From positions 62,001 to 126,000 of the IMG/VR virus record IMGVR_UViG_3300030329_004647: 64,000 nt of DNA; one strand, given 5' to 3'. Below are positions 17,295 to 55,303 of this stretch, one piece after another. The first letter of the stretch is position 1. Each line of letters opens with the position of its first letter. A program made the translations under genes and the position numbers. The notes below the pieces were generated by a model that saw nothing but the letters and a program-made list of their open reading frames with translations, was not told where the DNA came from and did no database searches.

Positions 17295-17727
17295 TTTTTT
17301 TAAACAACCCACAACCACATAAATCTAAATAATAATTAACCAAGTAACGAACTCTACTTGAACAACCTAGGAGTATAGCAGACACTTCTTTTTGATTAAT
17401 CCACTCACATCTTTCTATTCCTTCATTTTCATCAGGAACCAACTTACCACTATACTTTGTTTTCATCACAAACCAACTAGTTTCTTTTTGTAAAAAATTT
17501 TCTTTTAAAAAAACATGTCTAGTGTCTGTTAAATAAGAATGTAGTTTTAATTTTTTAAAAGGAATGCCTGTTTCTTCAGAAACTTCTCTAACAGCAGTTT
17601 CTTCAATAGATTCACCTAAATCTACTTTACCCTTTGGTAAATCCCAGTGACCCCTTCGGTGAATAAAAAGAATTTCTTCATTTTTATTAATAACTAACCC
17701 CCCCGCTGCTTTTATTATTTTTTTCAT
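17266..17727 (-). CDS. NUDIX hydrolase
   Basis: Nudix box PKGKVDLGESIEETAVREVSEETG; AAGGLVIN...WDLPKG as in Bacteroidota Nudix proteins. Confidence 0.93.
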   Translation of the reverse strand: MKKIIKAAGGLVINKNEEILFIHRRGHWDLPKGKVDLGESIEETAVREVSEETGIPFKKLKLHSYLTDTRHVFLKENFLQKETSWFVMKTKYSGKLVPDENEGIERCEWINQKEVSAILLGCSSRVRYLVNYYLDLCGCGLFKKTKGLLEKNH

Positions 17728-20702: not shown

Positions 20703-21254
20703 TTACAAGTCAGAGAACTTAATACCTTTTAAATCTTTTGGAGATAGAATAGGATTAGAAATACCAAGTTTATTTAATTCCCAGTCTATATTAATAGTTT
20801 CATCATCCCACATTAAAGTTTTTTCATGGGAAGGAGAATAATATTCGTCACACTTATATAAAAAAGTTGTGTGGTTTTCTAAGGATATAAACCCATGAGC
20901 AAAACCAGGGGGAATCATAAGCATTAGTTTATTTAAAGAAGACAACTCTATTTTGAAGTGTTGCCCGAACGTTTTCGACTTTTTACGTATATCTACCACT
21001 ATGTCTATAACCGCACCATTAACAACTCTAACTAATTTTGATTGTTCTTTAGGTTTAGTTTGGAAATGAAGGCCTCTGATTACTCCTTTGTGTGAAATTG
21101 AGTGGTTGTCCTGTTTAAATTTATAGTTTACACCGATACTCTTAAAATCTTTTTTATTCCAAGACTCTAAAAATCCTCCACGCTCATCACTAAAAAAATT
21201 AGGTTTTATAACAACCAAGTCTTCAAGAGGTGTATTTATTATTTGGTACTTCAT
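20703..21254 (-). CDS. rfbC: dTDP-4-dehydrorhamnose 3,5-epimerase
   Basis: DERGGFLESWN, QDNHSISHKGVIRGLHFQ, PPGFAHGF. Confidence 0.95.
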   Translation of the reverse strand: MKYQIINTPLEDLVVIKPNFFSDERGGFLESWNKKDFKSIGVNYKFKQDNHSISHKGVIRGLHFQTKPKEQSKLVRVVNGAVIDIVVDIRKKSKTFGQHFKIELSSLNKLMLMIPPGFAHGFISLENHTTFLYKCDEYYSPSHEKTLMWDDETINIDWELNKLGISNPILSPKDLKGIKFSDL

Positions 21255-28812: not shown

Positions 28813-31800
28813 ATGATATCAAATTTACACAAAATAGAAAGAAAGATTAATGTTTTAAACTCTATATATGAGGATAAGAGCCCTTCCTATAGATTAAAAG
28901 TACTTCACAAGAATTTAAATTTAAGTTTAAAAGAATGTGGAGTAATACTAAAAGAATCATCATCCACTAACCCAGACTATACTTATTTTTACGAAAACTT
29001 AGAAAAAAAGTTTAAAAAAAATTCATATAAGAACATAAGAGATATAATTTTTAATTATTTAAATGGGTGGATAATAGAAGAAGATATATTTTGGGTTTTT
29101 TACGTTGATTCAGGTGACGACATATTTCTAGACCCAACAGACGGGCCTGATAAATTAACCATAGTTTATCTTTTAACACAAAAAATACAATCTATTTTCC
29201 CTATAAGTGAAGACGAAGCATTTGAGATATCAAATGATTTTATAGACTTTAAATTAAACGAAGAAAAAACTAAAAGACTAGTAGAACAAAATCAGAAAAA
29301 AATTAATCCACCAGTACAACCAGGAGACTATATTAGGGTTATAGAGATAGACCATGATATGTTTCCACCAAGTGAATACGAACAAAATTATATGCCACCT
29401 GAACATTTAGAATTAGGTGAAGTACAAGAAGTATACCAAGAGGAGAATCCAATAGATGGGTCAGAAGTCACAATGTTAAGAGTTTATTTTCCAAACCTGG
29501 AATTTGATAGTGAAGATGTTATGGGTGGTGGAGGTCTAGAAGGTGGATATGATGATGGAGTTAGAGTTTTAGTGTTACCTTATGACACCTATATTAAAAC
29601 AGATGAGGTATTAACCGAACACGGTATCATAGGTGATAATAAACCGAACAGACCTAGAATACCTGATATTTTAAGAAAAAATTTAATTAGAGCAAGATTT
29701 GAAAGACCTGGAGGTTGGGGAAGAAATAGCGAACTTTTTATTTTATACCTAACTCCAGTAGGTAAAATTATGGACATCCAATTCGGAAGTACAACAAACG
29801 CTTCAGTATCCCCATTCCAAATAAACCAACAAGTAAGTTTTGGTGATTTATATAAATTTGAACAAGACTCTCCCTTTGATTTAAGAATGTTCGGAAGACT
29901 AAGAGAACAAGACGAACAAATGAGTTTATTTCCTACCGGAGACTGGGAATTTACAGTTGGTTTTGAAGATTACGCACTAGAAAACGGAGAAATGATTGCG
30001 GGTTCGGACCAAGATACCGCTGATTGGATAAGAAAAACAGCACCAGAAAGACTAGTAGCAAAAATCTTTAAAATGTGGGATGCTGGTGGAATAGACTTCT
30101 CCAACCTTAAGTTATTAGGATTACCAACTAACAGTGCTTTAATTACTTTTCTATTAAAACGATATATTAGAAATACTAAAAAACCTATTCCAGTTTCTTA
30201 TACATTTGATTGTGATGATTTAAGTGACCTATTTGATAAAGATAGTAGAGATTATAATTTAGATTATATTAAACAATATCTTTGTGGTGATGATAGTTTT
30301 TGGGATACTGACCTGTGGTATGGTAATGAGTGGAGTGATTATATGTCAGATGATATAGATGAAACAAATTGGAAAATTATAAGTGAAATTTTTGGAGGGG
30401 CATCACCATCAGATGCTGAAGATATATTAAACAGAAGTTCTTCTAGTGAAGAGGTAGACGAGTTAATAGAAAAATACGATGAGGAAATAGATGATATTAG
30501 AAATTTTGTAACCCAATCACATGATACAGCTATGGAAGATGCTACTAAAAGTGCGATGGCAGCAGATATTAAAGAAAAAATATTAGACCATTTTGGTGGT
30601 GGTAGCCAACATGATGGAAAAATCCAAGGAAAGTTATTTAGAAATGATAATGGAAAATTTAATTATGTGATTGAAGGGGATTTAAGGGATTTAGTTAACG
30701 AGGTGTGGGATAATACAGAAGACGTTTTTCAATTCCACCCAGATTATTCTAACACCACACTAGAAGACGCTTTAATGGAAATGGATGGAAGAACAATGGT
30801 TTCATATGATTTAGACCAACATTTATTTAGATTATTAATGGAAGAAGAATTTAAATTTTGGGACTACTGTGAAGGAAGATTGGGGGATTGTTTAGAGGTT
30901 GATACTAAATTTTTTGATGGTTACTGGCACCCAAGTTACGACATTAATGAATATCTCATTGACCGACTATATGAATTAATACCAGGACCAATACAAGAAC
31001 AGACAGAGAGGTATTTACAAAAAAAAGGAGACCAATTAACCCGTAAAGTTGTAAAAGACATTTTACATATATTAAAAACAGAAAAAGTTTTAGACGACCT
31101 TTATATCTTACCAGACCACGTTTCTGGCGTAGATGGAGACGAGTATACTAGGGGAGACTTAGAGTTTAATGTTACCCTTCATATTCTACAAAACCCAAAT
31201 CAAGATAGAGCTTTTATGGTCGATGCAAACATGGGCGGAGATTTTGATGATGAAATCGAGGTAATCATTAGTTTAGGCCCAAAGTTTGGACAAGGAGATT
31301 ATGAACAAGTACAAGGATTTTTAAATGATTATGTTCGTCACGAAATAGAACATGTTATAGACGCGTTAGAAGGTAATGAAGTAGAAACACCACAAGGTTT
31401 AAGTCCATTTGAATACTACACACAACCACATGAAGTTAGAGCACAAAAAGCTGGATTTAAAAGAAGAGCAAAAATAGAAAAAAGACCAGTTGAGGATATT
31501 GTTAAGGATTATATAGAATATAGGCAAAGTATAGATAAATTGACTGATGATGAAAAAAATGCATTAGTAACCCAACTAACCGAACAAGAAAAAAAAAGTA
31601 GATTCAAAACCATATACGAAAATGATAATTGGAAATATGTATGGCCAATAGGGGACGAGTCCTTTTGTGAAATAGCAAAGGGTACTAAATGGTGTGGGGA
31701 ATGGACTAAAGACCAGAACTGGTACCAGTCTATAGGTAGTAGTGGAACTCATTATATTTTAATAGATAAAAAAACTGGTGAAAAGTATAGTCTTGTAGAC

Positions 31801-33093
31801 CAAGAAAAGGTACCTGGAATGCCTAGTTATAAAGTAAGAATTTATGATAAGGATAGAGAATTCCTTAGTACACATAGATTTTTAGCGGACAAACCAACAC
31901 TACATGAATTGTTCAATCAATCCTATACCATGTTAGATAAATTAAGATATAATGTAGAAATTCCAAAAGAGGACTTAGATAATTTTTATAAAGAAACGAT
32001 AGAGCAGGATGTCTACGGAAGAGGAGAGGGTCACGAGAGCGCTAAACTTTTAGAGCTGGTATATAAAATTATAAAAGACCCAACCTTTGAGGGTCTTAAA
32101 CAACAATTAGAAGAAAACTATAATGGTGGGTTGACCGTATTAACTGAGGGTGATGTCCCAGTAATTAATAGTATGATTGCTGGTAAACAGTTTTTAAGTA
32201 TCTATCTTCCCGATGAGGATTTTAAGTCAGAGTGGATGAATATAGGTGATGATGATGATTATTATTTTGATTTAGCTGTAGACCGCTATTATAGTGAGGA
32301 CCATTGTGAAGAGATGGAGGAAGATGAAATTGCGTATATAGGGAGTTACATGAACAAAGAAAATATAAAAAAATTAAATAACCTTTCTGAAATTATTGGT
32401 GAACCAATAGGAGACTGGAGACAGGAATCTGAAATAGATGAGTATCTAACCAAATACTTTACCAAAGATTGGAACGACTATATATGGAGAATTGTGGAAC
32501 AGATTGGGTGTGCGGTAGGAAGAAACCGAGTTAAGGATATAAGAAAATTAGTGAAAGAGGGGTTACTTTTAGACGTGGATTATGTTGGTGCTAGAAACTA
32601 CGCAATGTGGAGAATAGATATAACATATCCTGAATTATTATACCTTGTAGGGATATATGGTGTGGATAATATAAAACAATTAGAAGACCATTCCATAAAT
32701 GACCTAGATGTAAATTTATATGACGCGTGGTGGGATAGTTGGTCTCTCGAAGGTGGTGAAGAAGATATTAATTGGGAAATGGGCAGATTCTTAGATAATG
32801 TAATGGAAGAATACGGTGATGACCTTAAAACTCTAGGTGAGAATGAAGAAAAATTTATGGAAACGATAAATAACTTAGGATTTACAAAACCCTATAGAGA
32901 ATGGCAACTAAAACAAGATGTTGAGGGAAGCAGTTACCAAAGGTCAATAATAATAAAAGATTGGGATTTAAAGAGTGGTAAAATACACATCCAGATACAA
33001 GAAAATGATGAACAAGGAAGATGGCAAACAAAACAACACCAAACCACTATTGATGAATTACCAACCTATGTTAATCAACACCAACTATTTTAA
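28813..33093 (+). CDS. 1426-aa multi-module protein (putative polyprotein) including an HExxH zincin-like module
   Basis: VRHEIEHVID...PHEVRA; a YENDNWKYVWP...GTKWC module; modules punctuated by LVEQ/LTEH/LREQ/IQEQ/LTEQ. Confidence 0.75.
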   Translation: MISNLHKIERKINVLNSIYEDKSPSYRLKVLHKNLNLSLKECGVILKESSSTNPDYTYFYENLEKKFKKNSYKNIRDIIFNYLNGWIIEEDIFWVFYVDSGDDIFLDPTDGPDKLTIVYLLTQKIQSIFPISEDEAFEISNDFIDFKLNEEKTKRLVEQNQKKINPPVQPGDYIRVIEIDHDMFPPSEYEQNYMPPEHLELGEVQEVYQEENPIDGSEVTMLRVYFPNLEFDSEDVMGGGGLEGGYDDGVRVLVLPYDTYIKTDEVLTEHGIIGDNKPNRPRIPDILRKNLIRARFERPGGWGRNSELFILYLTPVGKIMDIQFGSTTNASVSPFQINQQVSFGDLYKFEQDSPFDLRMFGRLREQDEQMSLFPTGDWEFTVGFEDYALENGEMIAGSDQDTADWIRKTAPERLVAKIFKMWDAGGIDFSNLKLLGLPTNSALITFLLKRYIRNTKKPIPVSYTFDCDDLSDLFDKDSRDYNLDYIKQYLCGDDSFWDTDLWYGNEWSDYMSDDIDETNWKIISEIFGGASPSDAEDILNRSSSSEEVDELIEKYDEEIDDIRNFVTQSHDTAMEDATKSAMAADIKEKILDHFGGGSQHDGKIQGKLFRNDNGKFNYVIEGDLRDLVNEVWDNTEDVFQFHPDYSNTTLEDALMEMDGRTMVSYDLDQHLFRLLMEEEFKFWDYCEGRLGDCLEVDTKFFDGYWHPSYDINEYLIDRLYELIPGPIQEQTERYLQKKGDQLTRKVVKDILHILKTEKVLDDLYILPDHVSGVDGDEYTRGDLEFNVTLHILQNPNQDRAFMVDANMGGDFDDEIEVIISLGPKFGQGDYEQVQGFLNDYVRHEIEHVIDALEGNEVETPQGLSPFEYYTQPHEVRAQKAGFKRRAKIEKRPVEDIVKDYIEYRQSIDKLTDDEKNALVTQLTEQEKKSRFKTIYENDNWKYVWPIGDESFCEIAKGTKWCGEWTKDQNWYQSIGSSGTHYILIDKKTGEKYSLVDQEKVPGMPSYKVRIYDKDREFLSTHRFLADKPTLHELFNQSYTMLDKLRYNVEIPKEDLDNFYKETIEQDVYGRGEGHESAKLLELVYKIIKDPTFEGLKQQLEENYNGGLTVLTEGDVPVINSMIAGKQFLSIYLPDEDFKSEWMNIGDDDDYYFDLAVDRYYSEDHCEEMEEDEIAYIGSYMNKENIKKLNNLSEIIGEPIGDWRQESEIDEYLTKYFTKDWNDYIWRIVEQIGCAVGRNRVKDIRKLVKEGLLLDVDYVGARNYAMWRIDITYPELLYLVGIYGVDNIKQLEDHSINDLDVNLYDAWWDSWSLEGGEEDINWEMGRFLDNVMEEYGDDLKTLGENEEKFMETINNLGFTKPYREWQLKQDVEGSSYQRSIIIKDWDLKSGKIHIQIQENDEQGRWQTKQHQTTIDELPTYVNQHQLF

Positions 33094-33909
33094 TCAATTA
33101 AGTAAACTCCAAGTAGTAGGTTTATGTTTATAACTGTACTTATTTTCTCCTAATATATTTAAAAGTCTTTCACCTAACTTTATAGCGTTCTCCACATCCT
33201 CGACAACTACATATTCATAATTAGAGTGCCAGCCATAATAACCCGCTGCAAAATTTAAACAACTAAAATCAAACATTTCTTTTAATACCATAGTATCCGT
33301 ATACGGGTGATTTAACCAGTCAGTAATTCCATGTTCTAATATAATATCTTTACACTTTTCGATAAAGTCACCATCTTCCTTATACAACTTTACACCCATT
33401 AAGGTTTTACTCATAGTATTATTTTCAGTAGAATCAAACTGTATAGCGTATCCTACATCTTTAAAAAATTCTTTATCCGCTTGTCTGGTTCCTTGACAAC
33501 CTGTTTCTTCAGCGACTGGAAAAAACACTTTAACATTATCTAATTTGTCTAATAACTCTAAACAAATAAAAACCCCAGCTTTGTCATCACCCCCTATACC
33601 ACATCTATTACCATCATTATCGGAATACGCAACTAAAGATAGTTTTTTTTCGTCTTGAGCATTTAAATGATACTCCTCTTTTACAGTATAGTCTTGGATT
33701 TCATGCACACTATCCAAATGAGCCACCAAACACGGAAAATGTTTAGCATTACCCTTAGTCACATAAATCGAACCAAGCTTATCTATCTTATAGGAATAAC
33801 CCTTTTTATCTAAAATACCTGTAACATATTCTATTAATAAGTCTTCTTCCCAAGTATAGGTAGGTACTGATAAAATATTTTTAAGTTTTTTTATTGTTTT
33901 TTTATTCAT
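33094..33909 (-). CDS. M20/M28/M42-clan zinc peptidase
   Basis: AHLDSVH, GGDDKAG, AEETGC, IQFD and YHS-like C-terminal His motif. Confidence 0.85.
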   Translation of the reverse strand: MNKKTIKKLKNILSVPTYTWEEDLLIEYVTGILDKKGYSYKIDKLGSIYVTKGNAKHFPCLVAHLDSVHEIQDYTVKEEYHLNAQDEKKLSLVAYSDNDGNRCGIGGDDKAGVFICLELLDKLDNVKVFFPVAEETGCQGTRQADKEFFKDVGYAIQFDSTENNTMSKTLMGVKLYKEDGDFIEKCKDIILEHGITDWLNHPYTDTMVLKEMFDFSCLNFAAGYYGWHSNYEYVVVEDVENAIKLGERLLNILGENKYSYKHKPTTWSLLN

Positions 33910-33913
33910 ACTA

Positions 33914-33945
33914 CAAAGATAAATAAAAATTTTAATATAAACAAA
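33914..33945 (-). promoter_or_regulatory. Bacteroidota sigma-A-type promoter (likely leaderless)
   Basis: TTTG, N20, TATCTTTG, TAGT, ATG. Confidence 0.8.
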
Positions 33946-33970
33946 TTATATTTATAATAAAACCTTTAAA

Positions 33971-34777
33971 ATGAAATTTATGATTAAAGAAGAGATAAAT
34001 AGAATTAAAAATTTAATGTTAGTTAATGAAGAAAATGAGATGGGTCAATATATGGATTCCACATATCTTAAAACATCCGAACAAGCAGGGATAGGAGATG
34101 AAGAAACAGAAGTAATTGTATTTAACACAATTAAAGATGCTATAGAACATAATATGAAATTAGTGATGTTAAGACCAGAATATGTTGAAGTAGCTCGTAA
34201 CCTTATAGATAGTGAAGGAGCAAATGTTTTAGTGGGTACGGTTATAGATTTTCCATATGGGAACGGTAGTGTAACTGATAAAGTACAAGAAGCTAAACAA
34301 GCTGTAAATAATGGAGCAGATGAATTAGATTTTGTAATAGATTATAGAGCTTATTTAAGAGGAAATGTAGAAAAAGTTAGTAGAGAGATTAAAGAAGGTT
34401 CTGAAATTGGATTAAAAAATGGAAAAACAGTAAAATGGATTTTAGAGACTGCAGCCTTAACTGAAGACCAAATAGGGGAATTAACTTCTATAATTAGAGA
34501 TGTGATTATTGACAATTTTGGTGAAGGTGAAGCCGCAAATGTTTTTGTAAAAACATCTACAGGATTTTTTACACCAGAAGGGGGTGGTCCTGGAGGAGCT
34601 ACTGAAGAAGCGGTATCTATTATGACAAATAACGCAGGTCCCTTAAAGGTTAAAGCATCTGGTGGTATTTATAGTCAGGACGATTTGAAAAAAATGGTGG
34701 GAGCTGGAGCAAGTCGTATAGGTACTTCAGCAGCTAAAGAAATAATGTTAGGTCAAAAAACAGAAAAGGATTATTAA
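33971..34777 (+). CDS. deoC: deoxyribose-phosphate aldolase with class A leader
   Basis: MDSTYLK, VGTVIDFPYG, GADELDFVI, KWILET, FVKTSTG (Schiff-base Lys), KASGGI, RIGTS. Confidence 0.93.
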   Translation: MKFMIKEEINRIKNLMLVNEENEMGQYMDSTYLKTSEQAGIGDEETEVIVFNTIKDAIEHNMKLVMLRPEYVEVARNLIDSEGANVLVGTVIDFPYGNGSVTDKVQEAKQAVNNGADELDFVIDYRAYLRGNVEKVSREIKEGSEIGLKNGKTVKWILETAALTEDQIGELTSIIRDVIIDNFGEGEAANVFVKTSTGFFTPEGGGPGGATEEAVSIMTNNAGPLKVKASGGIYSQDDLKKMVGAGASRIGTSAAKEIMLGQKTEKDY

Positions 34778-35664
34778 TGAAAAAGATAATTAAAAAAATA
34801 TTAAAAGAAGAGGTGGTAGATGTCACCCTATTCCAAGACGAAATATTCGACTTACCCCTAGAACAAAGAAAAGCTGTAATGAGTGGTTTGGAGGAGTTAT
34901 TGAAAAATAAAAATAATGATTCCGACTTACAAGAACAAATTTCTTACAAAGGTATTCCTGAAATAAAAGCTACAACCACATTTGGTAAAATTTTAAAATG
35001 GTTAAAAAGGTATATAACAGATAAAGCGACTAACTTTTTAATCAACGCCTCTATGAGTGAGGTTAAGGACACTATACAAATGTTAAAAGTTTTAGACCCT
35101 ACCGATATGCAAGGACTATTCAAACCAAAAGCAATGTATTTAGGAGGGGGGATTGATTTTGCTGAGGACGGAGCATCTTGGAGAACTAGAGTAGAGGAGT
35201 TCTATGGTCCAGACCATGTAGTTAAGGATGAACGACTACGTACATTAGTAACAACAGGAAAATTAAATTTTGGTGGTATAAAATATCCAGCTTTATTGAA
35301 TCCATTAAGAGCTGAAACGGTAAGAGCCGAAGACCCAACATTCCAGGAAATGTTTAAAAAATGGAAGGCAAATGAATTAAATGATGAAGACATGATTATA
35401 TTCCAGGAAAAAGTTAGAGAACAAATCGTACACCAAGATTTATATATGTTACAAGTTTGTGATACTAATCTAATTAGTTTTGATGGGACAGCGGGAGCTG
35501 GAACATTCGGTGAAGCTCAAATATCCGCCTTAAAAAATCAACAAGTTTTTATATGGTTAAATAAAGGTATGAAAATGTCTAATATTTCTCCTTGGTTATT
35601 TCCATCTATTACTAAAATATTAAAGGACGATGAACTATGGCCTTTCTTAAAACGACTAGGTTAA
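34777..35664 (+). CDS. nucleoside 2-deoxyribosyltransferase / dNMP N-glycosidase-like protein with N-terminal leader
   Basis: MYLGGGIDF...SWR, LNP, DLYMLQVCD, GAGTFGE pattern. Confidence 0.7.
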   Translation: MKKIIKKILKEEVVDVTLFQDEIFDLPLEQRKAVMSGLEELLKNKNNDSDLQEQISYKGIPEIKATTTFGKILKWLKRYITDKATNFLINASMSEVKDTIQMLKVLDPTDMQGLFKPKAMYLGGGIDFAEDGASWRTRVEEFYGPDHVVKDERLRTLVTTGKLNFGGIKYPALLNPLRAETVRAEDPTFQEMFKKWKANELNDEDMIIFQEKVREQIVHQDLYMLQVCDTNLISFDGTAGAGTFGEAQISALKNQQVFIWLNKGMKMSNISPWLFPSITKILKDDELWPFLKRLG

Positions 35665-36161
35665 TAATACTTAACCACCTTACGGTTTAAACTCCAAGTA
35701 AATTTATATTCTGCAGTAAACTTGTTATTGTTATGTTCTTTACAACATTTACCACAAGCTAACTCTCTTTTACTTTTTCTAGCGTAATACACATCCCTTT
35801 CACATTTAGGACAAGTAGCAATCCATTTCATTACCCTGGATTTATCAACACCACTATTACTAGTACATCTTTCACCACTACACCCAATAGACATAGCAAT
35901 TTTTCTCCAATTATTGTCATGATTAGAATAACCACGTTTTTTGTAATCCAAAGCGTGTGCGATTTCGTGTAAAATAGTATTTTTTACTCTAGACTCACTT
36001 GTTTCGTGTTGAGTCAAAGGTCTAGACAGTGAAAGAGTTTTAAGTCTACCATTATGACAACCAAATCTACGCACCGCTCTATCCCACTTAAAGGTGTAAT
36101 CAGATACTCCGTGTCTTCTCATTAGTTTAAGGGCCATATTTCTTGCTTTTTCTAAATTCAT
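35661..36161 (-). CDS. SprT-like zinc metalloprotease
   Basis: RRFGC, TILHEIAHAL, HDNNWRKIAMSIG, C-terminal CxxC...CxxC. Confidence 0.9.
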   Translation of the reverse strand: MNLEKARNMALKLMRRHGVSDYTFKWDRAVRRFGCHNGRLKTLSLSRPLTQHETSESRVKNTILHEIAHALDYKKRGYSNHDNNWRKIAMSIGCSGERCTSNSGVDKSRVMKWIATCPKCERDVYYARKSKRELACGKCCKEHNNNKFTAEYKFTWSLNRKVVKYY

Positions 36162-36622
36162 TTCTCAAAAGTTATTGTGTTAATTTTAATTCCGTCGTAA
36201 TGTCTACCACCTGTAATACCCATTAATTTTAGATAATCTTTAATTTCACCTTTTACTTTACTTCTTATTTCTTCTCTAATTCTTTTGTGACTTTGATATC
36301 CCCACGCAGGACTATAAGTAGATTCATATCCATCCCAGTAAGTTTTTTTACAACGAGTTAGTTTTTTAATATCTTGTTGAGTGTCATTATCACGGTCATA
36401 TCCTCTACCTGTACAGGCAGTACCCCTTACCTTCAAGTTTACTAATATTGTAGAGTACTCAGGATTGTAGATACTTCTATTACCCCACTCGTCGTCTAGT
36501 TTAATCCAAGTAATACGATATTCTATATTCATTCTCCCACCCCAGTGTTGATTTTCTCTGTTGTCAAAGGAGAATCTTTCTTCTTTAATAAGTCGTTGTA
36601 ATTTTTTAGGTAATGTTTTCAT
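36158..36622 (-). CDS. hypothetical protein
   Basis: 154-aa ORF; ATG 4 nt after the -7 box. Confidence 0.75.
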   Translation of the reverse strand: MKTLPKKLQRLIKEERFSFDNRENQHWGGRMNIEYRITWIKLDDEWGNRSIYNPEYSTILVNLKVRGTACTGRGYDRDNDTQQDIKKLTRCKKTYWDGYESTYSPAWGYQSHKRIREEIRSKVKGEIKDYLKLMGITGGRHYDGIKINTITFEK

Positions 36623-36674: not shown

Positions 36675-38699
36675 TTACTTTTGTTTAATTTTAACTTTGT
36701 TTGTTTTTTTGTTGTAGTTAACAAAATAAGAATTTCCTTCAGTAACAGTACCTTTTAATATTTCTTCTGAGATTAAATCTTCTAAAATTGTTTGGATAGC
36801 TCTCTGTAAAGGTCTCGCTCCATACTTTTCATCATAACCCTCTTCAGAAATGTGTTTAATCACTGTAGGTCCAAAACTAAAATCGTAATCTTTTTCTTTT
36901 AATCTAATTTTTAATTCAGCTAATTGAATTTTTACAATTTTTTGTAAGTCCACAACTTTAAGTGACTCAAATATAACAACCTCATCTATTCTATTAAGAA
37001 ATTCAGGATTGAACGTGTTCCTCAGAGACTTAGAAATTAAAGACCTCATATGTTCTTCTTTGTGTTGTTCTTTAGCTTTAGTAGAAAAACCAATTCCTTC
37101 TCCCCAGTCTTGTACTTTTTTAACCCCTATATTAGATGTCATAATAATTAGAGTATTTTTAAAATTTATTTTTCTTCCACTTGAATCTGTAATATAACCA
37201 TCATCTAAAATTTGTAACATTAGATTAAAAATATCAGGATGAGCCTTTTCAACCTCATCAAATAAAATTAAAGAATAAGGATTATTACGAACTTTTTCTG
37301 TTAGTTGTCCTCCTTCATTATAACCCACATATCCAGGAGGAGAACCGATTAGTCTAGATAAAGCGTGTTTTTCTTGGAATTCAGACATATCTACTCTAAT
37401 TAATGATTCTTCAGAACCAAATACATGGGAAGACAGTTGTTTAGCTAAATAAGTTTTACCAACACCAGTAGGCCCTAAAAATATAAAAGAACCTATAGGT
37501 CTATTAGTATCCTTTATACCCACACTATTACGTTTAATAGCTTTAGATATTTTACTAACAGCAGTTTCTTGTCCAATAACCACACCTCTTAATTTATCCT
37601 CAAGATTAAGAAGTTCTTTTTTCTCCCCAATATCTAACCTACTTAATGGTATTTTAGTTATATCCGAAACAACCTCCATAATACTATCAACTGTTATTTC
37701 TGTTCTTTTTAAGTCTTGGTCTTTTTCCCACTTTAATTTTAATTTTTCTAAATCTGTAACTAATTTTCGCTCACTATCTCTTATGTCAGCAGCTTTTTCA
37801 TAATTTTGAGTCTTTACTACTTTCATTTTTTCTTCTTTAAGTTTTGCTATTTTTGTTTTTAGATTTTCTATTGATTTAGGGTACTTTACCTCTATTTGAA
37901 ATTTAGCACCAACTTCGTCTAGGATATCTATAGCTTTATCAGGAAACTGACGTTCATTAATATATCTTTCCGCAAATTTTACACAACTCTCTAAAGCTTC
38001 TTCTGAATAATTTACCTTATGATGAGATTCGTACTTATGTTTTATCTGCTTCAATATTGTAAGAGTTTCTTCGGTACTTGTTGGAGCTATACTCACTTTT
38101 TGAAATCTTCTTTCTAAAGCTCCATCTTTCTCAACCTTTTCTCTATACTCGTTTAAGGTTGTAGCCCCTATACATTGTACTTCACCTCTCGCTAAAGCGG
38201 GTTTAAAAATATTAGCAGCGTCTAAAGAACCAGACGAATTTCCAGTACCCACAACAGTGTGCAACTCATCAATAAAAATAATAACATCTTTATTATTTTT
38301 TAGTTCATCTATTACAGCTTTCATTCTTTCCTCAAACTGACCCCTGTACTTAGTTCCAGCCACTAGTGATGTTAACTCTAATGAAACTATTCTTTTATCT
38401 AACAATGGTCTAGGACCCTCACCCCTACTTAACATAATAGACAAACCCTCTACTATTGCTGTTTTTCCACAACCAGGTTCACCTATTAAAACAGGATTGT
38501 TCTTTTTTCTACGACACAACGTTTGTGCTATTCTTTTAATTTCTTTTTTTCTACCAATAACTGGGTCTAATTCACCTGCTCTTGCTAATGCTGTTAAATC
38601 TGTAGAAAAATTATCCAGAATGGGAGTTCCTTCTGGTTGTATTTCATCTCTATTTTCGTCTCTTCTAGGTTTATCTGACGCTTCTTTAAAATCTGACAT
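36675..38699 (-). CDS. clpC: ClpC/ClpB-family AAA+ ATPase lacking the N-terminal Clp-N domain
   Basis: LDPVIGR, GEPGCGKT, FIDELH, GPTGVGKT, IDMSE-like VDMSEF, LFDEVEKAH, GARPL; short ClpC-type middle domain. Confidence 0.9.
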   Translation of the reverse strand: MSDFKEASDKPRRDENRDEIQPEGTPILDNFSTDLTALARAGELDPVIGRKKEIKRIAQTLCRRKKNNPVLIGEPGCGKTAIVEGLSIMLSRGEGPRPLLDKRIVSLELTSLVAGTKYRGQFEERMKAVIDELKNNKDVIIFIDELHTVVGTGNSSGSLDAANIFKPALARGEVQCIGATTLNEYREKVEKDGALERRFQKVSIAPTSTEETLTILKQIKHKYESHHKVNYSEEALESCVKFAERYINERQFPDKAIDILDEVGAKFQIEVKYPKSIENLKTKIAKLKEEKMKVVKTQNYEKAADIRDSERKLVTDLEKLKLKWEKDQDLKRTEITVDSIMEVVSDITKIPLSRLDIGEKKELLNLEDKLRGVVIGQETAVSKISKAIKRNSVGIKDTNRPIGSFIFLGPTGVGKTYLAKQLSSHVFGSEESLIRVDMSEFQEKHALSRLIGSPPGYVGYNEGGQLTEKVRNNPYSLILFDEVEKAHPDIFNLMLQILDDGYITDSSGRKINFKNTLIIMTSNIGVKKVQDWGEGIGFSTKAKEQHKEEHMRSLISKSLRNTFNPEFLNRIDEVVIFESLKVVDLQKIVKIQLAELKIRLKEKDYDFSFGPTVIKHISEEGYDEKYGARPLQRAIQTILEDLISEEILKGTVTEGNSYFVNYNKKTNKVKIKQK

Positions 38700-39040: not shown

Positions 39041-40897
39041 ATGGGAAAAGTAATTGGAATCGATTTAGGGACCACAAATTCTTGTGTATCAGTAGTAGAA
39101 GCTGGAAGTCCTGTAATCATAGTAAATTCAGAGGGTAAAAGAACCACGCCTTCTGTAGTAGCATTTAAAGATGGTGATAGAGTAGTTGGTGAACCAGCAA
39201 AAAGACAAGCGGTATCAAATCCGGATAAAACAATATATTCAGTAAAAAGATTTATAGGTAGTAAGTTTAGTGAAATTAGTGACGAATCTAAAAAAATGGC
39301 TTATAAGGTAAATAAAGGGAAAGGTAATGTTGTTAATATTAAAGTTGATGACAAGTCTTACATCCCCCAAGAAATATCTGCTGTTGTTTTACAAAATCTA
39401 AAAAAAACAGCTGAAGAATACCTAGGGTCTAAAGTAAAACAAGCTGTTATAACTGTACCCGCGTATTTTAATGACGCACAAAGACAAGCTACAAAAGAAG
39501 CGGGAGAAATAGCAGGTTTAGAGGTTCTTAGAATAATTAACGAACCGACCGCTGCGGCATTAGCTTACGGTATAGATGAAAAAAATGAAAAAACTATTGC
39601 CGTCTACGATTTAGGTGGTGGTACTTTTGATATTTCTATATTAGAAATATCTGATGGACTTTTCGAAGTTAAGTCTACAAATGGAGACACACAATTAGGT
39701 GGTGATAATTTTGATGAAGTAATTATTGATTGGTTATTATCGGAATTTAAAACAGAGTCTGGTGTTGATTTAACAAAAGACGCTTCCGCTTTACAAAGAT
39801 TAAGAGAAGCTTCTGAAAAAGCAAAAGTAGAATTGTCTACCGCGAGCACAACAGAAATTAATTTACCTTATTTAACAGCTGATAATACAGGTCCAAAACA
39901 CTTAGTTAGAAATTTAACTAAAGCAAAGTTCCAATCAATGATTGACGACCTAATTAAAAAAAGTATTAGCCCTTGTAGGAAAGCTTTAAAAGACGCTGGA
40001 CTTAAAGTTACAGATATAGATGAAGTTTTATTGGTTGGTGGTTCTACAAGAATCCCAGCAATTCAAGAAGCAGTTGAAAAGTTTTTTAAACAAAAACCGT
40101 CTAAAGGTGTAAATCCAGATGAGGTGGTAGCTATGGGAGCAGCAATCCAAGGAGGCGTGTTAGCTGGAGAGGTTAAAGATGTTTTACTATTAGATGTTAC
40201 ACCTCTTTCACTAGGTATTGAAACTATGGGTGGTGTTATGACAAAACTAATAGATTCCAACACTACTATTCCTACTAGTAAATCAGAAGTGTTTTCTACA
40301 GCTTCAAATAATCAACCAGCAGTAGACATACACGTAGTTCAAGGTGAAAGACCTATGGCTGATGACAATAGAACACTTGGAAGATTTCAACTAACTGACC
40401 TACCACCAGCACCTAGAGGGGTTCCTCAAATTGAGGTTACTTTTGATATTGACGCAAATGGTATTATCAATGTTTCAGCAAAAGATAAAGGAACAGGTAA
40501 AATACAAAATATTAAAATTGAGTCTGGCAGTTCATTGTCTGAAGAAGAAATTAATAAAATGAAAACAGAAGCTGAACAAAACGCTAAAGAAGACGCTATT
40601 AAAAAAGATAAAGTAGAAAAACTTAATACGGCAGACGCGACAATATTCCAAACAGAAAAACAAATAAAAGAGTTTGGAGATAAACTTGACGACACAGATA
40701 AATCAAGATTAGAAAATACAATTAAAGAGTTAGACGAGGTAAGAAAAAATGAGGACCTTGAAGGTATTGATGATTTAACTGAAAAAATAAATGAAATGTG
40801 GCAAGAAATTAGTACAAAACTATACCAACAAACCGACCAACCAGAACCAGAGACCAATGATGGTCCTTCAGATGTAAAATTTGAAGAAGTTAAGTAG
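39041..40897 (+). CDS. dnaK: molecular chaperone DnaK (Hsp70)
   Basis: [35 protein letters not shown]-terminal DVKFEEVK. Confidence 0.98.
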
Positions 40898-49022: not shown

Positions 49023-50765
49023 ATGAACAAAGAACAATTAATACATGAGTACGCTAAGTGTTTTAAAAACACATCATATGCTATAGAGAGTTATCTAGAG
49101 ACATACGACAATACTCAAAGTAAATACGTTCCCTTTAAACTTTTTCCTGAACAGAAAAAGATGTTAAACAACTTTGAGAAGTATAATGAAAATATAACCA
49201 AAAAATATCGACAAGCTGGTGTGTCCACAGCAACCGCAGCCTGGATATCCAAACAACTACAATTCGCTTCTAAAACAAAACCAGAAAAAGTTCTGATTCT
49301 AGCTAATAAACTAGATACAGCTCAAGAATTAGCTAATAAAATTAGAGGATTTTTAAATCAATGGCCAGAATGGGTTAATGTTGGTTTTTCTAAAGAAAAA
49401 GATTCCCAAAGACATTATAAATTAAATAATGGATGTGAAGTTAAAGCTGTTGCCACCTCTGTAGATGCACTAAGAGGATATACACCAACCATATTGATAT
49501 TTGATGAAGCAGCCTATATTGAAGCTGGAGACGACCTATGGGCAGCATGTATGGCTTCATTATCTACAGGAGGTCAAGTTATCGTAATTTCAACACCAAA
49601 CGGTTATGATAAAATTTATTATGAAATATATGACCAATCTATTCAAGGAATGAATAATTTTCAAATATCAGAATTACATTGGGAAAACGACCCTAGATTT
49701 ACTAAAGATTTAGAATGGGTAAAAACTAAAGATATTGTACATTATATGTTAAATCGTGAAGATTATAACGATGATTTAAATATAAAAGAAGATGATTTAG
49801 ATAAGTATCCTTCTTTAATAAAAAAAGGATATAAACCATACTCTTCATGGTTTGAATCAATGTGTAAAAAGTTAAAGTTCGATAGAAGAAAAATATCCCA
49901 GGAATTAGAAAGTGCTTTTTTAGGTTCTGGTGATAATGTTATACCCATTGATACTATAGATAATATAAAAGAAAGAATGGTAGAGGAACCTAAAGAAAAA
50001 TATGCAAGTGGACAATTATGGGTTTGGGAAGAAGCTATTGTAGGACATAAATATATTATGGGTATAGACGTATCAAGAGGAGACTCTGAGGACTTCACCT
50101 CAATTGTGGTTATAGATTTTGAAGAAAGAAAACAGGTAATGGAGTATTTGGGAAAAATACCACCTGATTTAGCAGCGGACTTAGCTTTTAAATGGGGTAA
50201 TCTATATAAAGCTTACATCGTTATAGACATTACAGGAGGTATGGGCGTAGCTACATCAAGAAAATTACAGGAATTAGGTTATAGAGATTTATATGTAGAA
50301 GGAGCTAATACAGCTGATAAGTGGAAATACAATCCTAAACTATTAGAAAAAATACCAGGACTTAGTTTTAATAATAAAAGAACACAAATTGTTTCTGCTT
50401 TTGAAGAAGCTCTACGTCATGGTTTTAATGTTAAATCTCACAGATTATTAAATGAACTTTATACTTTCGTATATGTTAACGGTAAACCCAACCACATGAA
50501 AGGAAAACATGATGATTTAATCATGGCAATGGCTATGGCTATTTATGTTGGTGAAAGTTCTTTTTCACAACTTACAAAAGCTGATGAAATGACAAAAGCA
50601 ATGTTGGATAGTTGGGTTACACATAAAAAAGAAAATGATGAACAGTCAGTTGACCTAAGACCAGGTAGAGATTCTAACGTTCTAAACCCTCATATAACGC
50701 CACAAGCAACACAACAAGGGCTATATAGAGAGTATAGTTGGTTATTTGGAGCAAAACCTAAGTAA
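49023..50765 (+). CDS. terminase large subunit (T4 gp17-like)
   Basis: KYRQAGVST Walker A, LIFDEAA Walker B, ISTPNG motif III, GIDVSRGDSED and HDDLIMA nuclease motifs. Confidence 0.95.
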   Translation: MNKEQLIHEYAKCFKNTSYAIESYLETYDNTQSKYVPFKLFPEQKKMLNNFEKYNENITKKYRQAGVSTATAAWISKQLQFASKTKPEKVLILANKLDTAQELANKIRGFLNQWPEWVNVGFSKEKDSQRHYKLNNGCEVKAVATSVDALRGYTPTILIFDEAAYIEAGDDLWAACMASLSTGGQVIVISTPNGYDKIYYEIYDQSIQGMNNFQISELHWENDPRFTKDLEWVKTKDIVHYMLNREDYNDDLNIKEDDLDKYPSLIKKGYKPYSSWFESMCKKLKFDRRKISQELESAFLGSGDNVIPIDTIDNIKERMVEEPKEKYASGQLWVWEEAIVGHKYIMGIDVSRGDSEDFTSIVVIDFEERKQVMEYLGKIPPDLAADLAFKWGNLYKAYIVIDITGGMGVATSRKLQELGYRDLYVEGANTADKWKYNPKLLEKIPGLSFNNKRTQIVSAFEEALRHGFNVKSHRLLNELYTFVYVNGKPNHMKGKHDDLIMAMAMAIYVGESSFSQLTKADEMTKAMLDSWVTHKKENDEQSVDLRPGRDSNVLNPHITPQATQQGLYREYSWLFGAKPK

Positions 50766-54601: not shown

Positions 54602-55303
54602 ATGAAGATTTTAGGACCCAAAGATATTGGCCACGGATTATTAATAGAATATGATGCTGGACATCTCTCACCACAAGACAATGTTAAAGTAATTAAAGAG
54701 ATGAAAAACTCTGAGTTTTCTGATGAAGTGTATATGTATTGTATCTTACAAAAATATGGAACACCAAATAGAAACGGGAGAGTATACCCAAAAAGAATAT
54801 TAGAAAGAGAAAATGATAGATACCAAGACGTTATTAAAAGAGGAAGTGCTATTTCCGAACTAAACCACCCAGAATCTTCACTAATTGATTTAGAAAGAAC
54901 TTCTCATGTTATCACAGAAACTTTTTGGGATGGTAACAAACTAATGGGAAGACTAAAATTGTTAACAACTCCAGGATACCACCAAAAAGGAATAGTATCA
55001 TCTATGGGGGATATCGCAGCTAATTTATTAAGACAAGGAATCACTTTAGGTATTTCATCTAGAGGAGTTGGTTCACTAAAGAAAAGCGGAGAACACAATG
55101 AGGTACAAGATGATTTTGAATTGATATGTTTTGACCTTGTTTCATCACCATCTACACCAGGCTCTTATCTATTTAAAGACATGAGTGAAGTTGATAATTA
55201 TGATGAAGTATTAGAGACCGTAAAAGAAAAAGATTCATTCGACTCAAAAATAGATAGGTCGCTTTCTCTAATGGATAGATTAGATAACTTTCTTAATCAT
55301 TAA
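54602..55303 (+). CDS. prohead core protease (T4 gp21-like)
   Basis: NRNGRVYP, ELNHP (catalytic His), GISSRGVG (catalytic Ser), DLVSSPS; ATG 54602 preferred over the track's TTG 54587. Confidence 0.93.
   Translation: MKILGPKDIGHGLLIEYDAGHLSPQDNVKVIKEMKNSEFSDEVYMYCILQKYGTPNRNGRVYPKRILERENDRYQDVIKRGSAISELNHPESSLIDLERTSHVITETFWDGNKLMGRLKLLTTPGYHQKGIVSSMGDIAANLLRQGITLGISSRGVGSLKKSGEHNEVQDDFELICFDLVSSPSTPGSYLFKDMSEVDNYDEVLETVKEKDSFDSKIDRSLSLMDRLDNFLNH

What the first reader, a model, noticed from the sequence alone, without database searches (positions are those of the whole stretch)
33971..35664. Coupled deoC plus deoxyribosyltransferase-like gene, both with cargo leaders
Seen in sequence: the two genes are translationally coupled (TAATG) behind TATTTATA. 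DERA starts only after IKEEINRIKNLMLVNEE, and the second protein after LKEE and LQEQ. Established: DNPH1/Rcl-type N-glycosidases release 2-deoxyribose-5-phosphate from dNMPs, and DERA splits it into glyceraldehyde-3-phosphate and acetaldehyde. Inference: a two-step dNMP catabolic pathway that is packaged or late-expressed. It could turn nucleotides into glycolytic carbon or remove modified nucleotides. A metabolic enzyme carrying a virion-type leader is unexpected.
Basis: partly seen in the sequence, partly recalled or inferred. Interest (0 to 1): 0.68.

Follow-up and report, generated by a model that had tools for sequence, protein, structure and literature searches.

The report
Leader-tagged phage deoxynucleotide breakdown gene pair
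A marine T4-like jumbo phage carries a conserved two-gene operon, driven by a late-type promoter, for a deoxyribose-phosphate aldolase and a DNPH1/NDT-fold enzyme; both start with short N-terminal leaders like those T4 uses to load proteins into its head, which suggests (unproven) that nucleotide-degrading enzymes travel in the virion.

Summary
33971-34777 encodes a genuine DERA: TIGR00126 scores 149 bits against a cut-off of 117, the fold matches solved DERAs, and the Schiff-base lysine is present. It has about 20-25 extra N-terminal residues outside the barrel. 34777-35664 overlaps it by TAATG. It encodes a conserved helical N-region plus a C-terminal domain (116-295) with the NDT/DNPH1/MilB fold (Z 12.6) and an intact Tyr121/Asp221/Glu246 triad. 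DERA sits directly upstream of this gene in 20 of 20 related viral loci. DeoC also co-occurs with the family in three distant phages.

The operon lies 22 nt behind TATTTATA. That motif precedes 37 genes (1.8 expected), including terminase, portal, prohead protease and scaffold.

Both N-termini belong to leader families found almost only at N-termini in this genome. Distant homologues of both enzymes carry T4-CTS-like leaders instead (T4: MKTYQEFIAE). The leaders contain or precede (L/I/V)xE, the gp21-type cleavage motif, and the phage has a T4-type head module with an S77 protease.

Best reading: a dNMP N-glycosidase plus DERA pathway made late and probably loaded into the capsid. Catalysis, substrate, cleavage and packaging are inferred, not shown.

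The parts
33949..33956 (+). TATTTATA, core of the (A)TATTTATA(A) upstream motif; a late-type phage promoter candidate 22 nt before the DERA start
   Evidence: Seen in the sequence. The motif precedes 37 genes against 1.8 expected. These include terminase, portal, prohead protease, scaffold and many leader-bearing genes, at 12-30 nt from the ATG.
33971..34777 (+). Deoxyribose-phosphate aldolase (DERA/DeoC), 268 aa
   Evidence: TIGR00126 149.2 bits against a cut-off of 117.3. Pfam DeoC. PDB DERAs match at E 1e-24. AF2 pLDDT 85.9; Foldseek E 3e-20, TM 0.88-0.93 to solved DERAs. K155, K194, K228, D120 and the C-terminal Y268 are invariant in 15 orthologues.
33971..34030 (+). DERA N-terminal leader, residues 1-20. 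It contains IKE-7, the T1 core EINRIKNLM (residues 8-16, 33992-34018) and VNE-20, a candidate gp21-type cleavage site 8 residues before the DERA core
   Evidence: It lies outside the profile and the barrel. The T1 motif is N-terminal only in this genome. It is conserved in 13 of 14 orthologues, with (L/I/V)xE right after it. Codons vary synonymously among T1 genes.
34550..34552 (+). Codon of Lys194 in the KTSTGF motif, the Schiff-base lysine of DERA
   Evidence: Aligned to the VKTSTGF motif of solved DERAs and invariant in alignment A3. Its identity as the Schiff-base lysine rests on established DERA knowledge.
34775..34779 (+). TAATG stop/start overlap between DERA and ORF B
   Evidence: The same overlap, or a gap of 0-10 nt, occurs in 20 of 20 related loci. 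Independent contigs bridge it.
34777..35664 (+). ORF B, 295 aa: leader, conserved helical N-region and NDT/DNPH1-fold domain
   Evidence: 309 close relatives in marine metagenomes, on contigs up to 298 kb. Only 52 clusters among 1.84 billion representatives. AF2 pLDDT 85.7.
34777..34809 (+). T3 leader of ORF B, residues 1-11, ending in LKE-11. It fits the hydrophobic-x-x-hydrophobic-hydrophobic-x-E pattern of the T4 CTS
   Evidence: The T3 motif scores 5 N-terminal against 1 internal. It aligns column for column with the T4-CTS-like termini of distant homologues. Contig depth spikes over exactly this stretch, with sequences that diverge on both sides.
34927..34935 (+). LQE-53, a second candidate protease site in a disordered linker
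   Evidence: pLDDT is below 50 over residues 51-59. The aligned position carries [LIV]xE followed by S, Q, A, E or G in about 15 of 21 full-length family members.
35122..35661 (+). NDT/DNPH1/MilB-fold domain, residues 116-295. Catalytic codons: Tyr121 at 35137-35139, Asp221 at 35437-35439, Glu246 at 35512-35514
   Evidence: The top Foldseek hits (NDT, MilB, DNPH1, YtoQ) have probability about 1.0. VIA Z 12.6, rmsd 2.7-3.2 over 126-133 residues. The profile alignment to CtNDT puts D221 on D62 and E246 on E88. These residues are nearly invariant in the family. Seven of 27 members hit PF05014 and three hit PF15891.
54602..55303 (+). T4 gp21-type prohead core protease (Peptidase_S77), the enzyme proposed to cut the leaders
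   Evidence: Pfam PF03420, E 4e-25. It is flanked by a T4-type portal (50805-52640), a scaffold-like gene (55402-56823) and a Gp23-type major capsid protein (56838-58670).

Best explanation
The two genes form one conserved operon of an uncultured marine T4-superfamily jumbo phage. The contig is 232 kb, about 72% complete, and the host is probably Bacteroidota.

ORF B is a divergent NDT-superfamily enzyme with the Tyr/Asp/Glu triad. It most likely cuts the N-glycosidic bond of a deoxynucleoside 5'-monophosphate, as DNPH1, MilB and DmtZ do, releasing a base and 2-deoxyribose 5-phosphate. The DERA encoded just upstream then splits that product into glyceraldehyde 3-phosphate and acetaldehyde. This makes nucleotide removal irreversible and prevents build-up of deoxyribose 5-phosphate.

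The operon is transcribed from the phage's TATTTATA promoter class together with the head genes. Each protein begins with a short amphipathic leader (T1 on DERA, T3 on ORF B) that contains or precedes (L/I/V)xE. By analogy with the T4 capsid-targeting sequence, the leaders would bind the scaffolding core, carry the enzymes into the prohead and be removed by the gp21-type S77 protease. The mature enzymes would then be delivered with the DNA.

Shown: gene identity, folds, catalytic residues, synteny, promoter motif, and the existence, position and interchangeability of the leaders. Inferred: substrate, hydrolase rather than transferase chemistry, cleavage, packaging, injection and physiological purpose.
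For: Enzymes:
- DERA.
- NDT fold and triad.

Functional link between the two genes:
- DERA is immediately upstream of ORF B in 20 of 20 IMG/VR loci, although other neighbours change.
- DeoC lies 3.6 kb and 6 kb from ORF B-family genes in two distant phage contigs. In L030 it sits directly beside a degenerate paralogue. Both genes are also present in the 735 kb phage LR756501.
- NT5C-like and HAD-like genes neighbour distant homologues.
- NDT-family hydrolases characterised so far act on (d)NMPs, and a phage dAMP hydrolase, DmtZ, is known (PMC12884076).

Late expression: the TATTTATA motif precedes 37 genes, including terminase, portal, protease and scaffold.

Leaders:
- They are restricted to N-termini.
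- T1 and T2 show synonymous codon variation.
- Distant ORF B homologues start MKKYGEFINES, KNYENFINES and similar. The DERAs of LR756501 and L030 start with NFDKFVRE and KYNDFVNE. T4's CTS is MKTYQEFIAE.
- The same orthologue carries different leader types in different phages. This holds for the HAD-like protein, an AAA_33 kinase-like protein, DERA and ORF B.
- A T4-type head module with an S77 protease is present.
- T4 Alt is cut at ITE-6 and LTE-619, and all T4 internal head proteins use a CTS (PMC5694885).
- Other leader carriers are peptidoglycan hydrolases typical of ejected virion proteins.
Against: - No biochemical, proteomic or transcript data exist for this phage, and no RNA run holds the stretch.
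- ORF B itself reaches no Pfam threshold.
- Its 5'-phosphate-binding residues could not be assessed, so nucleoside rather than nucleotide specificity is open.
- T1 does not fit the T4 CTS pattern as neatly as T3 and T2 do.
- (L/I)xE is common in this K/E/I/L-rich proteome: 39% of N-terminal windows against 27% of internal ones.
- Leader-like N-termini occur on 10-14% of ORFs, including a superoxide dismutase and some minus-strand genes without the late motif. That is many more cargo proteins than T4 has and could point to a different role for the leaders.
- In LR756501 the two genes lie 100 kb apart.
Confidence: 0.5

Rival explanations
1. The enzymes form the same dNMP-to-triose pathway, but the leaders are not packaging signals. 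They serve another purpose common to many late proteins, such as docking to a phage-built assembly or membrane site, recognition by the phage's own DnaK or ClpB-like chaperones, or control of stability. Under this reading the enzymes act in the cytoplasm late in infection to dispose of unwanted or surplus deoxynucleotides.
For: Leader-like N-termini are found on 24-35 of 245 ORFs, including typical cytosolic enzymes (SOD, kinase-like, HAD) and a few genes without the late motif. The phage encodes DnaK (39041-40897) and a ClpB-like ATPase (36675-38699) close by. No virion data exist.
Against: The distant orthologues carry a near-copy of the experimentally defined T4 CTS. A T4-type scaffold, protease and capsid module is present. 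Candidate cleavage sites sit exactly at domain boundaries or in disordered linkers and are conserved. Peptidoglycan hydrolases share the leaders.
Confidence: 0.25
2. ORF B is not a dNMP hydrolase. It could be a nucleoside 2-deoxyribosyltransferase, a DmtZ-like deoxyribose-5-phosphate transferase that builds a non-canonical nucleotide, or a hydrolase of another N-glycoside such as NAD-derived or other nucleotide immune signals. DERA would then be only loosely connected, as general deoxyribose salvage.
For: Fold matches to transferases, hydrolases, YtoQ and even a TIR domain are tied within about 1.5 Z units. DmtZ shows that phage NDT enzymes can transfer as well as hydrolyse. HAD-like and NT5C-like phosphatase genes next to distant homologues would make nucleosides, the substrates of true NDTs.
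Against: The strict, translationally coupled DERA-ORF B adjacency (20 of 20 loci) and the repeated co-occurrence with DeoC, otherwise rare in phages, are best explained if ORF B releases deoxyribose 5-phosphate. That is DERA's substrate. Transferases release no free sugar.
Confidence: 0.2
3. The pair works in the synthetic direction: DERA makes deoxyribose 5-phosphate from glyceraldehyde 3-phosphate and acetaldehyde to feed deoxynucleotide synthesis through ORF B.
For: The DERA reaction is reversible (established knowledge). The phage carries other carbon-metabolism genes, such as a PEP synthase-like gene at 13811-16282.
Against: NDT-family chemistry goes through a glycosyl-enzyme intermediate formed from a nucleoside or nucleotide donor. 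Free deoxyribose 5-phosphate has no leaving group, and no such natural reaction is known (text; established knowledge).
Confidence: 0.03

Closest known systems
T4 capsid-targeting sequence (CTS) proteins: internal proteins IPI-III and Alt, processed by gp21
   Same: Unrelated proteins share a short N-terminal leader that ends in (L/I)xE. The phage has a T4-type portal, S77 protease, scaffold-like gene and Gp23 capsid module. Distant orthologues of both enzymes start with near-copies of MKTYQEFIAE. One T4 cargo, Alt, is also an enzyme.
   Different: There are three or more leader classes (T1, T2, T3) instead of one, on roughly 10-14% of genes rather than a handful. The cargo candidates are metabolic enzymes (DERA, NDT-like, HAD-like, SOD, kinase-like) rather than small basic anti-restriction proteins. 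Neither packaging nor cleavage was tested here.
DNPH1/Rcl and MilB/BcmB nucleotide N-glycosidases, with DERA as the downstream enzyme
   Same: Same fold and the same Tyr/Asp/Glu catalytic arrangement. The product of these hydrolases on dNMPs is DERA's substrate.
   Different: ORF B has a 115-residue N-terminal region, a roughly 45-residue insertion within the domain and a longer glycine-rich first loop. It is below Pfam thresholds. Its phosphate-binding residues and substrate are unknown. No natural NDT-like plus DERA operon was found in the papers searched.
DmtZ of PurZ0 Z-genome phages (NDT-superfamily dAMP hydrolase and deoxyribose-5-phosphate transferase)
   Same: A phage-encoded NDT-superfamily enzyme acting on a dNMP to reshape the nucleotide pool (PMC12884076).
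   Different: DmtZ is linked to DutZ and PurZ and to Z-base DNA, not to DERA. It has no leader and no N-terminal region. No sequence relationship to ORF B was detected.
Propeptide-processed ejection proteins of giant phages phiKZ and SPN3US
   Same: Many head-internal proteins, some of them enzymes, have N-terminal propeptides cut by a gp21-related protease, sometimes at several sites (PMC5694885).
   Different: Those phages use an S80 protease with A/S-x-E sites and have no shared short leader motif. The present phage has an S77 protease and recurrent leader motifs.

Membership tests
Deoxyribose-phosphate aldolase (DeoC, TIGR00126, class I aldolase) | Score above the curated equivalog cut-off | tested here: met
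   149.2 bits against 117.3.
Deoxyribose-phosphate aldolase (DeoC, TIGR00126, class I aldolase) | (beta/alpha)8 barrel superposable on solved DERAs | tested here: met
   AF2 pLDDT 85.9. Foldseek E 2.6e-20, TM 0.88-0.93, rmsd about 2 A to 6d33, 5dbu and 4xbk.
Deoxyribose-phosphate aldolase (DeoC, TIGR00126, class I aldolase) | Schiff-base lysine in the KTSTG motif, plus the second lysine, the aspartate and the C-terminal tyrosine | tested here: met
   K194 (VKTSTGF), K155, K228, D120 and Y268 are aligned with solved DERAs and invariant in 15 orthologues. Their catalytic roles rest on established DERA knowledge.
Deoxyribose-phosphate aldolase (DeoC, TIGR00126, class I aldolase) | Cleavage of 2-deoxyribose 5-phosphate | not testable with these tools
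   Needs an enzyme assay.
Nucleoside 2-deoxyribosyltransferase (NDT) superfamily | Flavodoxin-like NDT fold | tested here: met
   Residues 116-295. Foldseek top hits have probability about 1.0. VIA Z 12.6 to 7o62 and 6evs, 11.8 to MilB, 11.5 to DNPH1.
Nucleoside 2-deoxyribosyltransferase (NDT) superfamily | Catalytic Glu nucleophile with supporting Tyr and Asp | tested here: met
   E246 aligns to E88 and D221 to D62 of CtNDT in the profile alignment. Y121 falls on Y7 by the structural ranges. All three are nearly invariant in the family.
Nucleoside 2-deoxyribosyltransferase (NDT) superfamily | Pfam PF05014 or PF15891 gathering score | tested here: not met
   ORF B has no Pfam hit. Seven of 27 relatives hit PF05014 and three hit PF15891 below or at threshold; only P0167 reaches it, 30.5 against 30. 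ORF B is therefore filed as a divergent superfamily member by fold and motifs, not as a Pfam family member.
DNPH1/Rcl-type dNMP N-glycosidase | 5'-phosphate-binding residues and hydrolysis of dNMP to base plus deoxyribose 5-phosphate | not testable with these tools
   No residue-level structural alignment was available, and fold scores do not separate hydrolases from transferases. Only contextual support exists: the DERA linkage.
T4-type CTS-targeted, gp21-processed head-internal proteins | Short N-terminal leader shared by otherwise unrelated proteins | tested here: met
   T1, T2 and T3 are N-terminal only. Distant orthologues carry T4-CTS-like leaders. Leader types are swapped between orthologues.
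T4-type CTS-targeted, gp21-processed head-internal proteins | Leader ends in, or is followed by, a gp21-type (L/I)xE site | tested here: met
   LKE-11 and LQE-53 in ORF B; IKE-7 and VNE-20 in DERA, with IKE, IRE, LTE or ISE in orthologues. The motif alone is weakly specific.
T4-type CTS-targeted, gp21-processed head-internal proteins | Phage encodes a gp21-type prohead protease and a T4-type head module | tested here: met
   Peptidase_S77 at E 4e-25, Portal_T4 at E 4e-77, Gp23 at E 5e-71.
T4-type CTS-targeted, gp21-processed head-internal proteins | Presence in virions, removal of the leader, injection with the DNA | not testable with these tools
   Needs virion proteomics or reporter fusions. 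The leader-scaffold co-fold gave no verdict.

The most novel reading that the evidence does not exclude
This phage lineage may have expanded the T4 internal-protein system into a large, modular cargo system. Several interchangeable leader classes would load a tenth or more of its proteins into the head. The cargo would include a nucleotide-dismantling kit (NDT-fold N-glycosidase, DERA, HAD-like phosphatase, kinase-like protein), a superoxide dismutase and wall hydrolases. These enzymes would be injected with the DNA to act before any phage gene is expressed, for example to destroy nucleotide-derived defence molecules or to reshape the host deoxynucleotide pool.
Probability: 0.3. Interest if true: 0.85.

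Novelty: new variant of a known kind. Interest (0 to 1): 0.66.

Why it matters
If the leaders are capsid-targeting signals, they give a sequence-based way to read the injected proteome of uncultured T4-superfamily phages directly from metagenomes. They would also show that phages can deliver whole metabolic steps, not only inhibitors, at the moment of infection.

The DERA plus NDT-fold operon would be the first natural phage pathway that carries a deoxynucleotide down to central-carbon intermediates. It offers a defined, easily assayed candidate for nucleotide-pool manipulation or counter-defence in abundant marine Bacteroidota phages. The short leaders could also serve as tools for loading foreign proteins into capsids.

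Tried and rejected
- A single-protein scan of viral contigs gave only one locus. The 27-sequence alignment was too diverse for that tool. A 10-sequence alignment then gave 20 loci.
- The longer ORF B homologues (439-505 aa) are not DERA fusions. They carry insertions between two leader copies.
- P0167 against PDB sequences gave nothing. The family profile reached NDT entries only at E about 0.09.
- The sigma-70 promoter and terminator scan found nothing above chance in 33800-36300.
- No RNA run holds the stretch, so there is no expression evidence. Contigs laid on it confirm presence only.
- ThyA and ThyX were not found in the 232 kb fragment and dUTPase is present. This gives no clue to a modified base or to the dNMP targeted.
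- No paper combines DERA, deoxyribosyltransferase and phage. The moraphage paper mentions none of these features.
- A co-fold of the DERA leader (residues 1-40) with the scaffold-like protein gave no verdict, so it counts neither for nor against binding.
- The N-terminal region of ORF B (residues 1-115) was not folded or searched on its own.
Full report
**Setting**

The window is bases 62001-126000 of a 232,028-bp linear IMG/VR virus record that CheckV estimates to be 72% complete. It has 32% G+C. It encodes a T4-type head module: large terminase (49023-50765), Portal_T4 (50805-52640), Peptidase_S77 prohead protease (54602-55303), a scaffold-like gene (55402-56823) and a Gp23-type major capsid protein (56838-58670). 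The nearest cultured capsid relatives are distant: Microcystis phage Mel-JY01 and Flavobacterium phage immuto, at 42-44% identity over part of the protein.

Near-identical DNA occurs in marine and seawater metagenomes from 14 studies. A second enriched upstream motif, TAnnTTTG (TATCTTTGTAG), matches what I recall as the Bacteroidota -7 promoter box. It precedes mostly minus-strand genes, which suggests a Bacteroidota host. All reading was done under table 11.

**The observation**

ORF A (33971-34777) and ORF B (34777-35664) overlap by TAATG. TATTTATA lies at 33949-33956. Four independent runs contain contigs that bridge the junction without indels. No sigma-70-type promoter or + strand terminator lies between the genes. 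ORF B ends tail to tail with a SprT-like metalloprotease gene on the other strand.

**ORF A is a DERA with an appended leader**

- It scores 149 bits on TIGR00126, above the cut-off of 117.
- It matches solved DERAs at E 1e-24, with the ADExD, VKxIxE, VKTSTGF and VKASGG motifs conserved.
- Its model (pLDDT 85.9) superposes on DERA crystal structures with TM 0.88-0.93.
- K155, K194, K228, D120 and the C-terminal Tyr are invariant in 15 orthologues.
- The profile and the barrel both start at about residue 27-29. Residues 1-25 form a low-confidence helix. Cellular DERAs therefore lack this extension.

**ORF B is a divergent NDT-superfamily enzyme**

It has no Pfam hit of its own. Its family is small: 52 clusters at 50% identity among 1.84 billion representatives. 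Within marine jumbo-phage contigs it is abundant and highly conserved.

The AF2 model (pLDDT 85.7) has a helical N-region (residues 1-115) and an alpha/beta domain (116-295). All top Foldseek matches for that domain have probability near 1. They are nucleoside 2-deoxyribosyltransferases, MilB, DNPH1 and YtoQ. VIA-align gives Z 12.6-10.3 at rmsd about 3 A over 115-142 residues.

The family profile aligns D221 and E246 with D62 and E88 of the Chroococcidiopsis NDT. E88 is the residue ribosylated or mutated in the deposited structures. The structural ranges put Y121 on Y7. These residues are nearly invariant, as are L122, G124, W135, R136, N175, P176, E180, D229, G242, T243, W273 and K280. Seven of 27 relatives touch PF05014 and three touch PF15891. 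A language-model search also lands on NDT clusters.

**The two genes belong together**

- DERA lies immediately upstream of the ORF B homologue in all 20 IMG/VR loci recovered (56-85% identity). The other neighbours differ.
- In a contig holding a 40%-identical homologue, a DeoC gene lies 3.6 kb away, directly beside a degenerate ORF B paralogue.
- In another contig a DeoC gene lies 6 kb away.
- The 735-kb phage LR756501 has both genes, 100 kb apart.
- DERA is otherwise rare in bona fide phage records.
- NT5C-like or HAD-like genes flank several distant homologues.

NDT-family hydrolases characterised to date act on (d)NMPs and yield (deoxy)ribose 5-phosphate, and a phage dAMP hydrolase, DmtZ, has been described (PMC12884076). 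The simplest chemistry is therefore dNMP to base plus deoxyribose 5-phosphate (ORF B), followed by glyceraldehyde 3-phosphate plus acetaldehyde (DERA). This is an inference. Fold scores do not separate hydrolases from transferases.

**Expression class**

(A)TATTTATA(A) is the most enriched upstream word in the genome. TATTTATA precedes 37 genes against 1.8 expected. It stands 12-30 nt before the starts of terminase, portal, protease, scaffold, tail genes, DERA and many leader-bearing genes. The operon thus shares its promoter class with structural genes. That fits late expression but has not been measured.

**The leaders**

Across the 245 ORFs of the contig, three motifs occur almost only at N-termini:

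| Class | Core motif | N-terminal hits | Internal hits |
|---|---|---|---|
| T1 | E-x-x-R-I-R/K-x-L-H/M | 9 strict, about 12 loose | 0 strict |
| T2 | K-I-x-L-T-E-x-x-L-x-x-l-I-x-x-V | 7 | 1 |
| T3 | L-I-K-K-I-L-R/K-E | 5 | 1 |

. DERA carries T1 and ORF B carries T3.

- T1 and T2 codons vary synonymously, so selection acts on the peptide.
- A general pattern (hydrophobic-x-x-hydrophobic-hydrophobic-x-E) occurs in 35 of 245 N-terminal windows against 153 of 2583 internal windows (p = 6e-6).
- Distant ORF B homologues begin MKKYGEFINES, MKIIKNYENFINES, MIKKFNEYFNDS and MALRKFDQFVNES.
- The LR756501 ORF B and DERA homologues begin MKNFTRFINEN and MVKNFDKFVRE. The L030 DeoC begins MLTIKYNDFVNEN.
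- These closely resemble the T4 capsid-targeting sequence MKTYQEFIAE (PMC8442874). In alignment A1 the T3 leader occupies the same columns.
- Orthologues swap leader class between phages. The HAD-like protein has a T2 leader here but CTS-like leaders elsewhere. An AAA_33/Zeta-like kinase has T3 in one relative and T1 in another.
- Leader carriers include an M23-SLT peptidoglycan hydrolase and a VanY peptidase. In this genome and its relatives they also include an Fe/Mn superoxide dismutase.
- All leader classes contain or are followed by (L/I/V)xE. In T4, Alt is cut at ITE-6 and LTE-619 by gp21, and all internal head proteins enter by a CTS (PMC5694885). Ip proteins are injected anti-defence factors recognised by their N-terminal signal (PMC12373910).
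- In DERA the conserved site (VNE-20; IKE, IRE, LTE or ISE in orthologues) lies 8 residues before the core.
- In ORF B, LKE-11 closes the leader. LQE-53 sits in a disordered linker, at a position where about 15 of 21 family members have [LIV]xE.

Taken together this supports, but does not prove, capsid targeting and S77 processing.

**Caveats**

- (L/I)xE is frequent in this proteome.
- T1 fits the CTS pattern less well than T3 and T2.
- The number and nature of the leader-bearing proteins far exceed the T4 precedent.
- A few leader-like genes lack the late motif.
- The leader-scaffold co-fold returned no verdict.
- There is no transcript or protein evidence.
- The substrate of ORF B, and hence the purpose of the pathway, is open. 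It could be disposal of a particular dNMP, carbon or energy recovery, or attack on nucleotide-derived defence molecules. A search for thymidylate synthases gave no hint of base replacement.

**Verdict**

DERA, NDT-fold nucleotide hydrolases and CTS-type leaders are each known. New here are the conserved DERA plus NDT-fold operon in a phage and the attachment of T4-like, interchangeable leaders to these and other metabolic enzymes. I rate it a new variant of a known kind, interest 0.66, and confidence 0.5 in the full model.

Confidence in the separate parts is higher:

| Part | Confidence |
|---|---|
| DERA identity | about 0.95 |
| NDT-superfamily enzyme with intact triad | about 0.9 |
| Co-regulation with head genes | about 0.8 |
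| dNMP glycosidase to DERA pathway | about 0.6 |
| Capsid targeting | about 0.55 |

Noticed in passing
whole contig; in the window e.g. 2766, 3699, 5319, 5871, 6415, 7361, 8008, 10877, 16674, 16998, 22958, 24140, 40970, 58721, 61945 (gene starts, + strand): Three N-terminal leader families (T1, T2, T3) sit on at least 24 ORFs. A looser CTS-like pattern sits on 35 of 245 ORFs. They cluster around the head module, almost all on the + strand.
   Followed up: yes
window-wide; e.g. 33893-33907 on the minus strand, upstream of the M42-like peptidase gene 33094-33909: There are two promoter-like motif classes. (A)TATTTATA(A) stands before structural and leader genes. TAnnTTTG (TATCTTTGTAG), which resembles the Bacteroidota -7 box, stands before mostly minus-strand genes. 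The pattern suggests an early/late split and a Bacteroidota host.
   Followed up: partly
16998-17294 (+) and 56838-58670 (+): A 98-aa T1-leader protein aligns with residues 43-71 of the major capsid protein, including EATA(S/A)DNSGS(Y/F) just after a (L/I)xE site (E 3e-5). The T1 motif may mimic the capsid protein's own propeptide.
   Followed up: partly
L009:3485-4138 (-); own genome, window coordinates 114037-114690 (-), outside the window: An Fe/Mn superoxide dismutase carries a T3-type leader (Sod_Fe_C E 9e-41).
   Followed up: partly
L035:1420-2280 (G000:C1:185366-186226); L027:7003-7821; L031:9143-10018; L034:524-1414: A conserved HAD-like protein with a DxDDN motif and no Pfam hit lies next to ORF B homologues in three distant phages, where it has CTS-like leaders. 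In this genome it sits between tail sheath and tube genes and has a T2 leader.
   Followed up: partly
L010:2151-2819 (-), L014:3495-4148 (-), L014:5883-6551 (+): In relatives, the DERA-ORF B pair is flanked by leader-tagged AAA_33/Zeta-toxin-like kinase and HAD acid-phosphatase-like genes. The kinase orthologue has a T3 leader in one phage and a T1 leader in another.
   Followed up: partly
L030:4443-5357 (+) beside DeoC L030:3391-4371 (-): A degenerate ORF B-family paralogue (like P0169) lacks the YLGGG and GT..E motifs. It lies head to head with a 326-aa DeoC that has a CTS-like start. Many small ORFs of that contig start MKIKKFNE-like.
   Followed up: partly
P0003, P0004, P0006, P0122, P0123 (homologues of ORF B): Variants of 417-505 aa carry 100-200 extra residues inserted between a first leader copy and a second, internal leader-like copy.
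   Followed up: no
34754-34814 and 33935-34018: In four seawater runs, contig depth spikes 4- to 40-fold over the 33-nt T3 leader of ORF B, and the contigs diverge on both sides. Some contigs share only the promoter plus T1 leader of DERA. The leader-coding DNA appears to be shared by other genes or relatives.
   Followed up: partly
13811-16282 (-), 36675-38699 (-), 39041-40897 (+), 17266-17727 (-), 20703-21254 (-): Auxiliary genes in the window: a PEP synthase/PPDK-like enzyme, a ClpB-like double AAA ATPase, a full-length DnaK, a NUDIX hydrolase and a dTDP-4-dehydrorhamnose epimerase. The core gene set resembles the recently described moraphages, which have Bacteroidota hosts, DnaK and a ClpA-like gene (PMC12619734). 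Kinship was not tested.
   Followed up: partly
28813-33093 (+): A 1426-aa protein behind a late-type motif has no Pfam match, and its partial homologues sit in the same position in relatives.
   Followed up: no
L007:3917-5017 (+): One DERA orthologue (366 aa, on a 298-kb contig) replaces the T1 leader with an unrelated extension of about 120 residues. It keeps an LKE site just before the DERA core.
   Followed up: no
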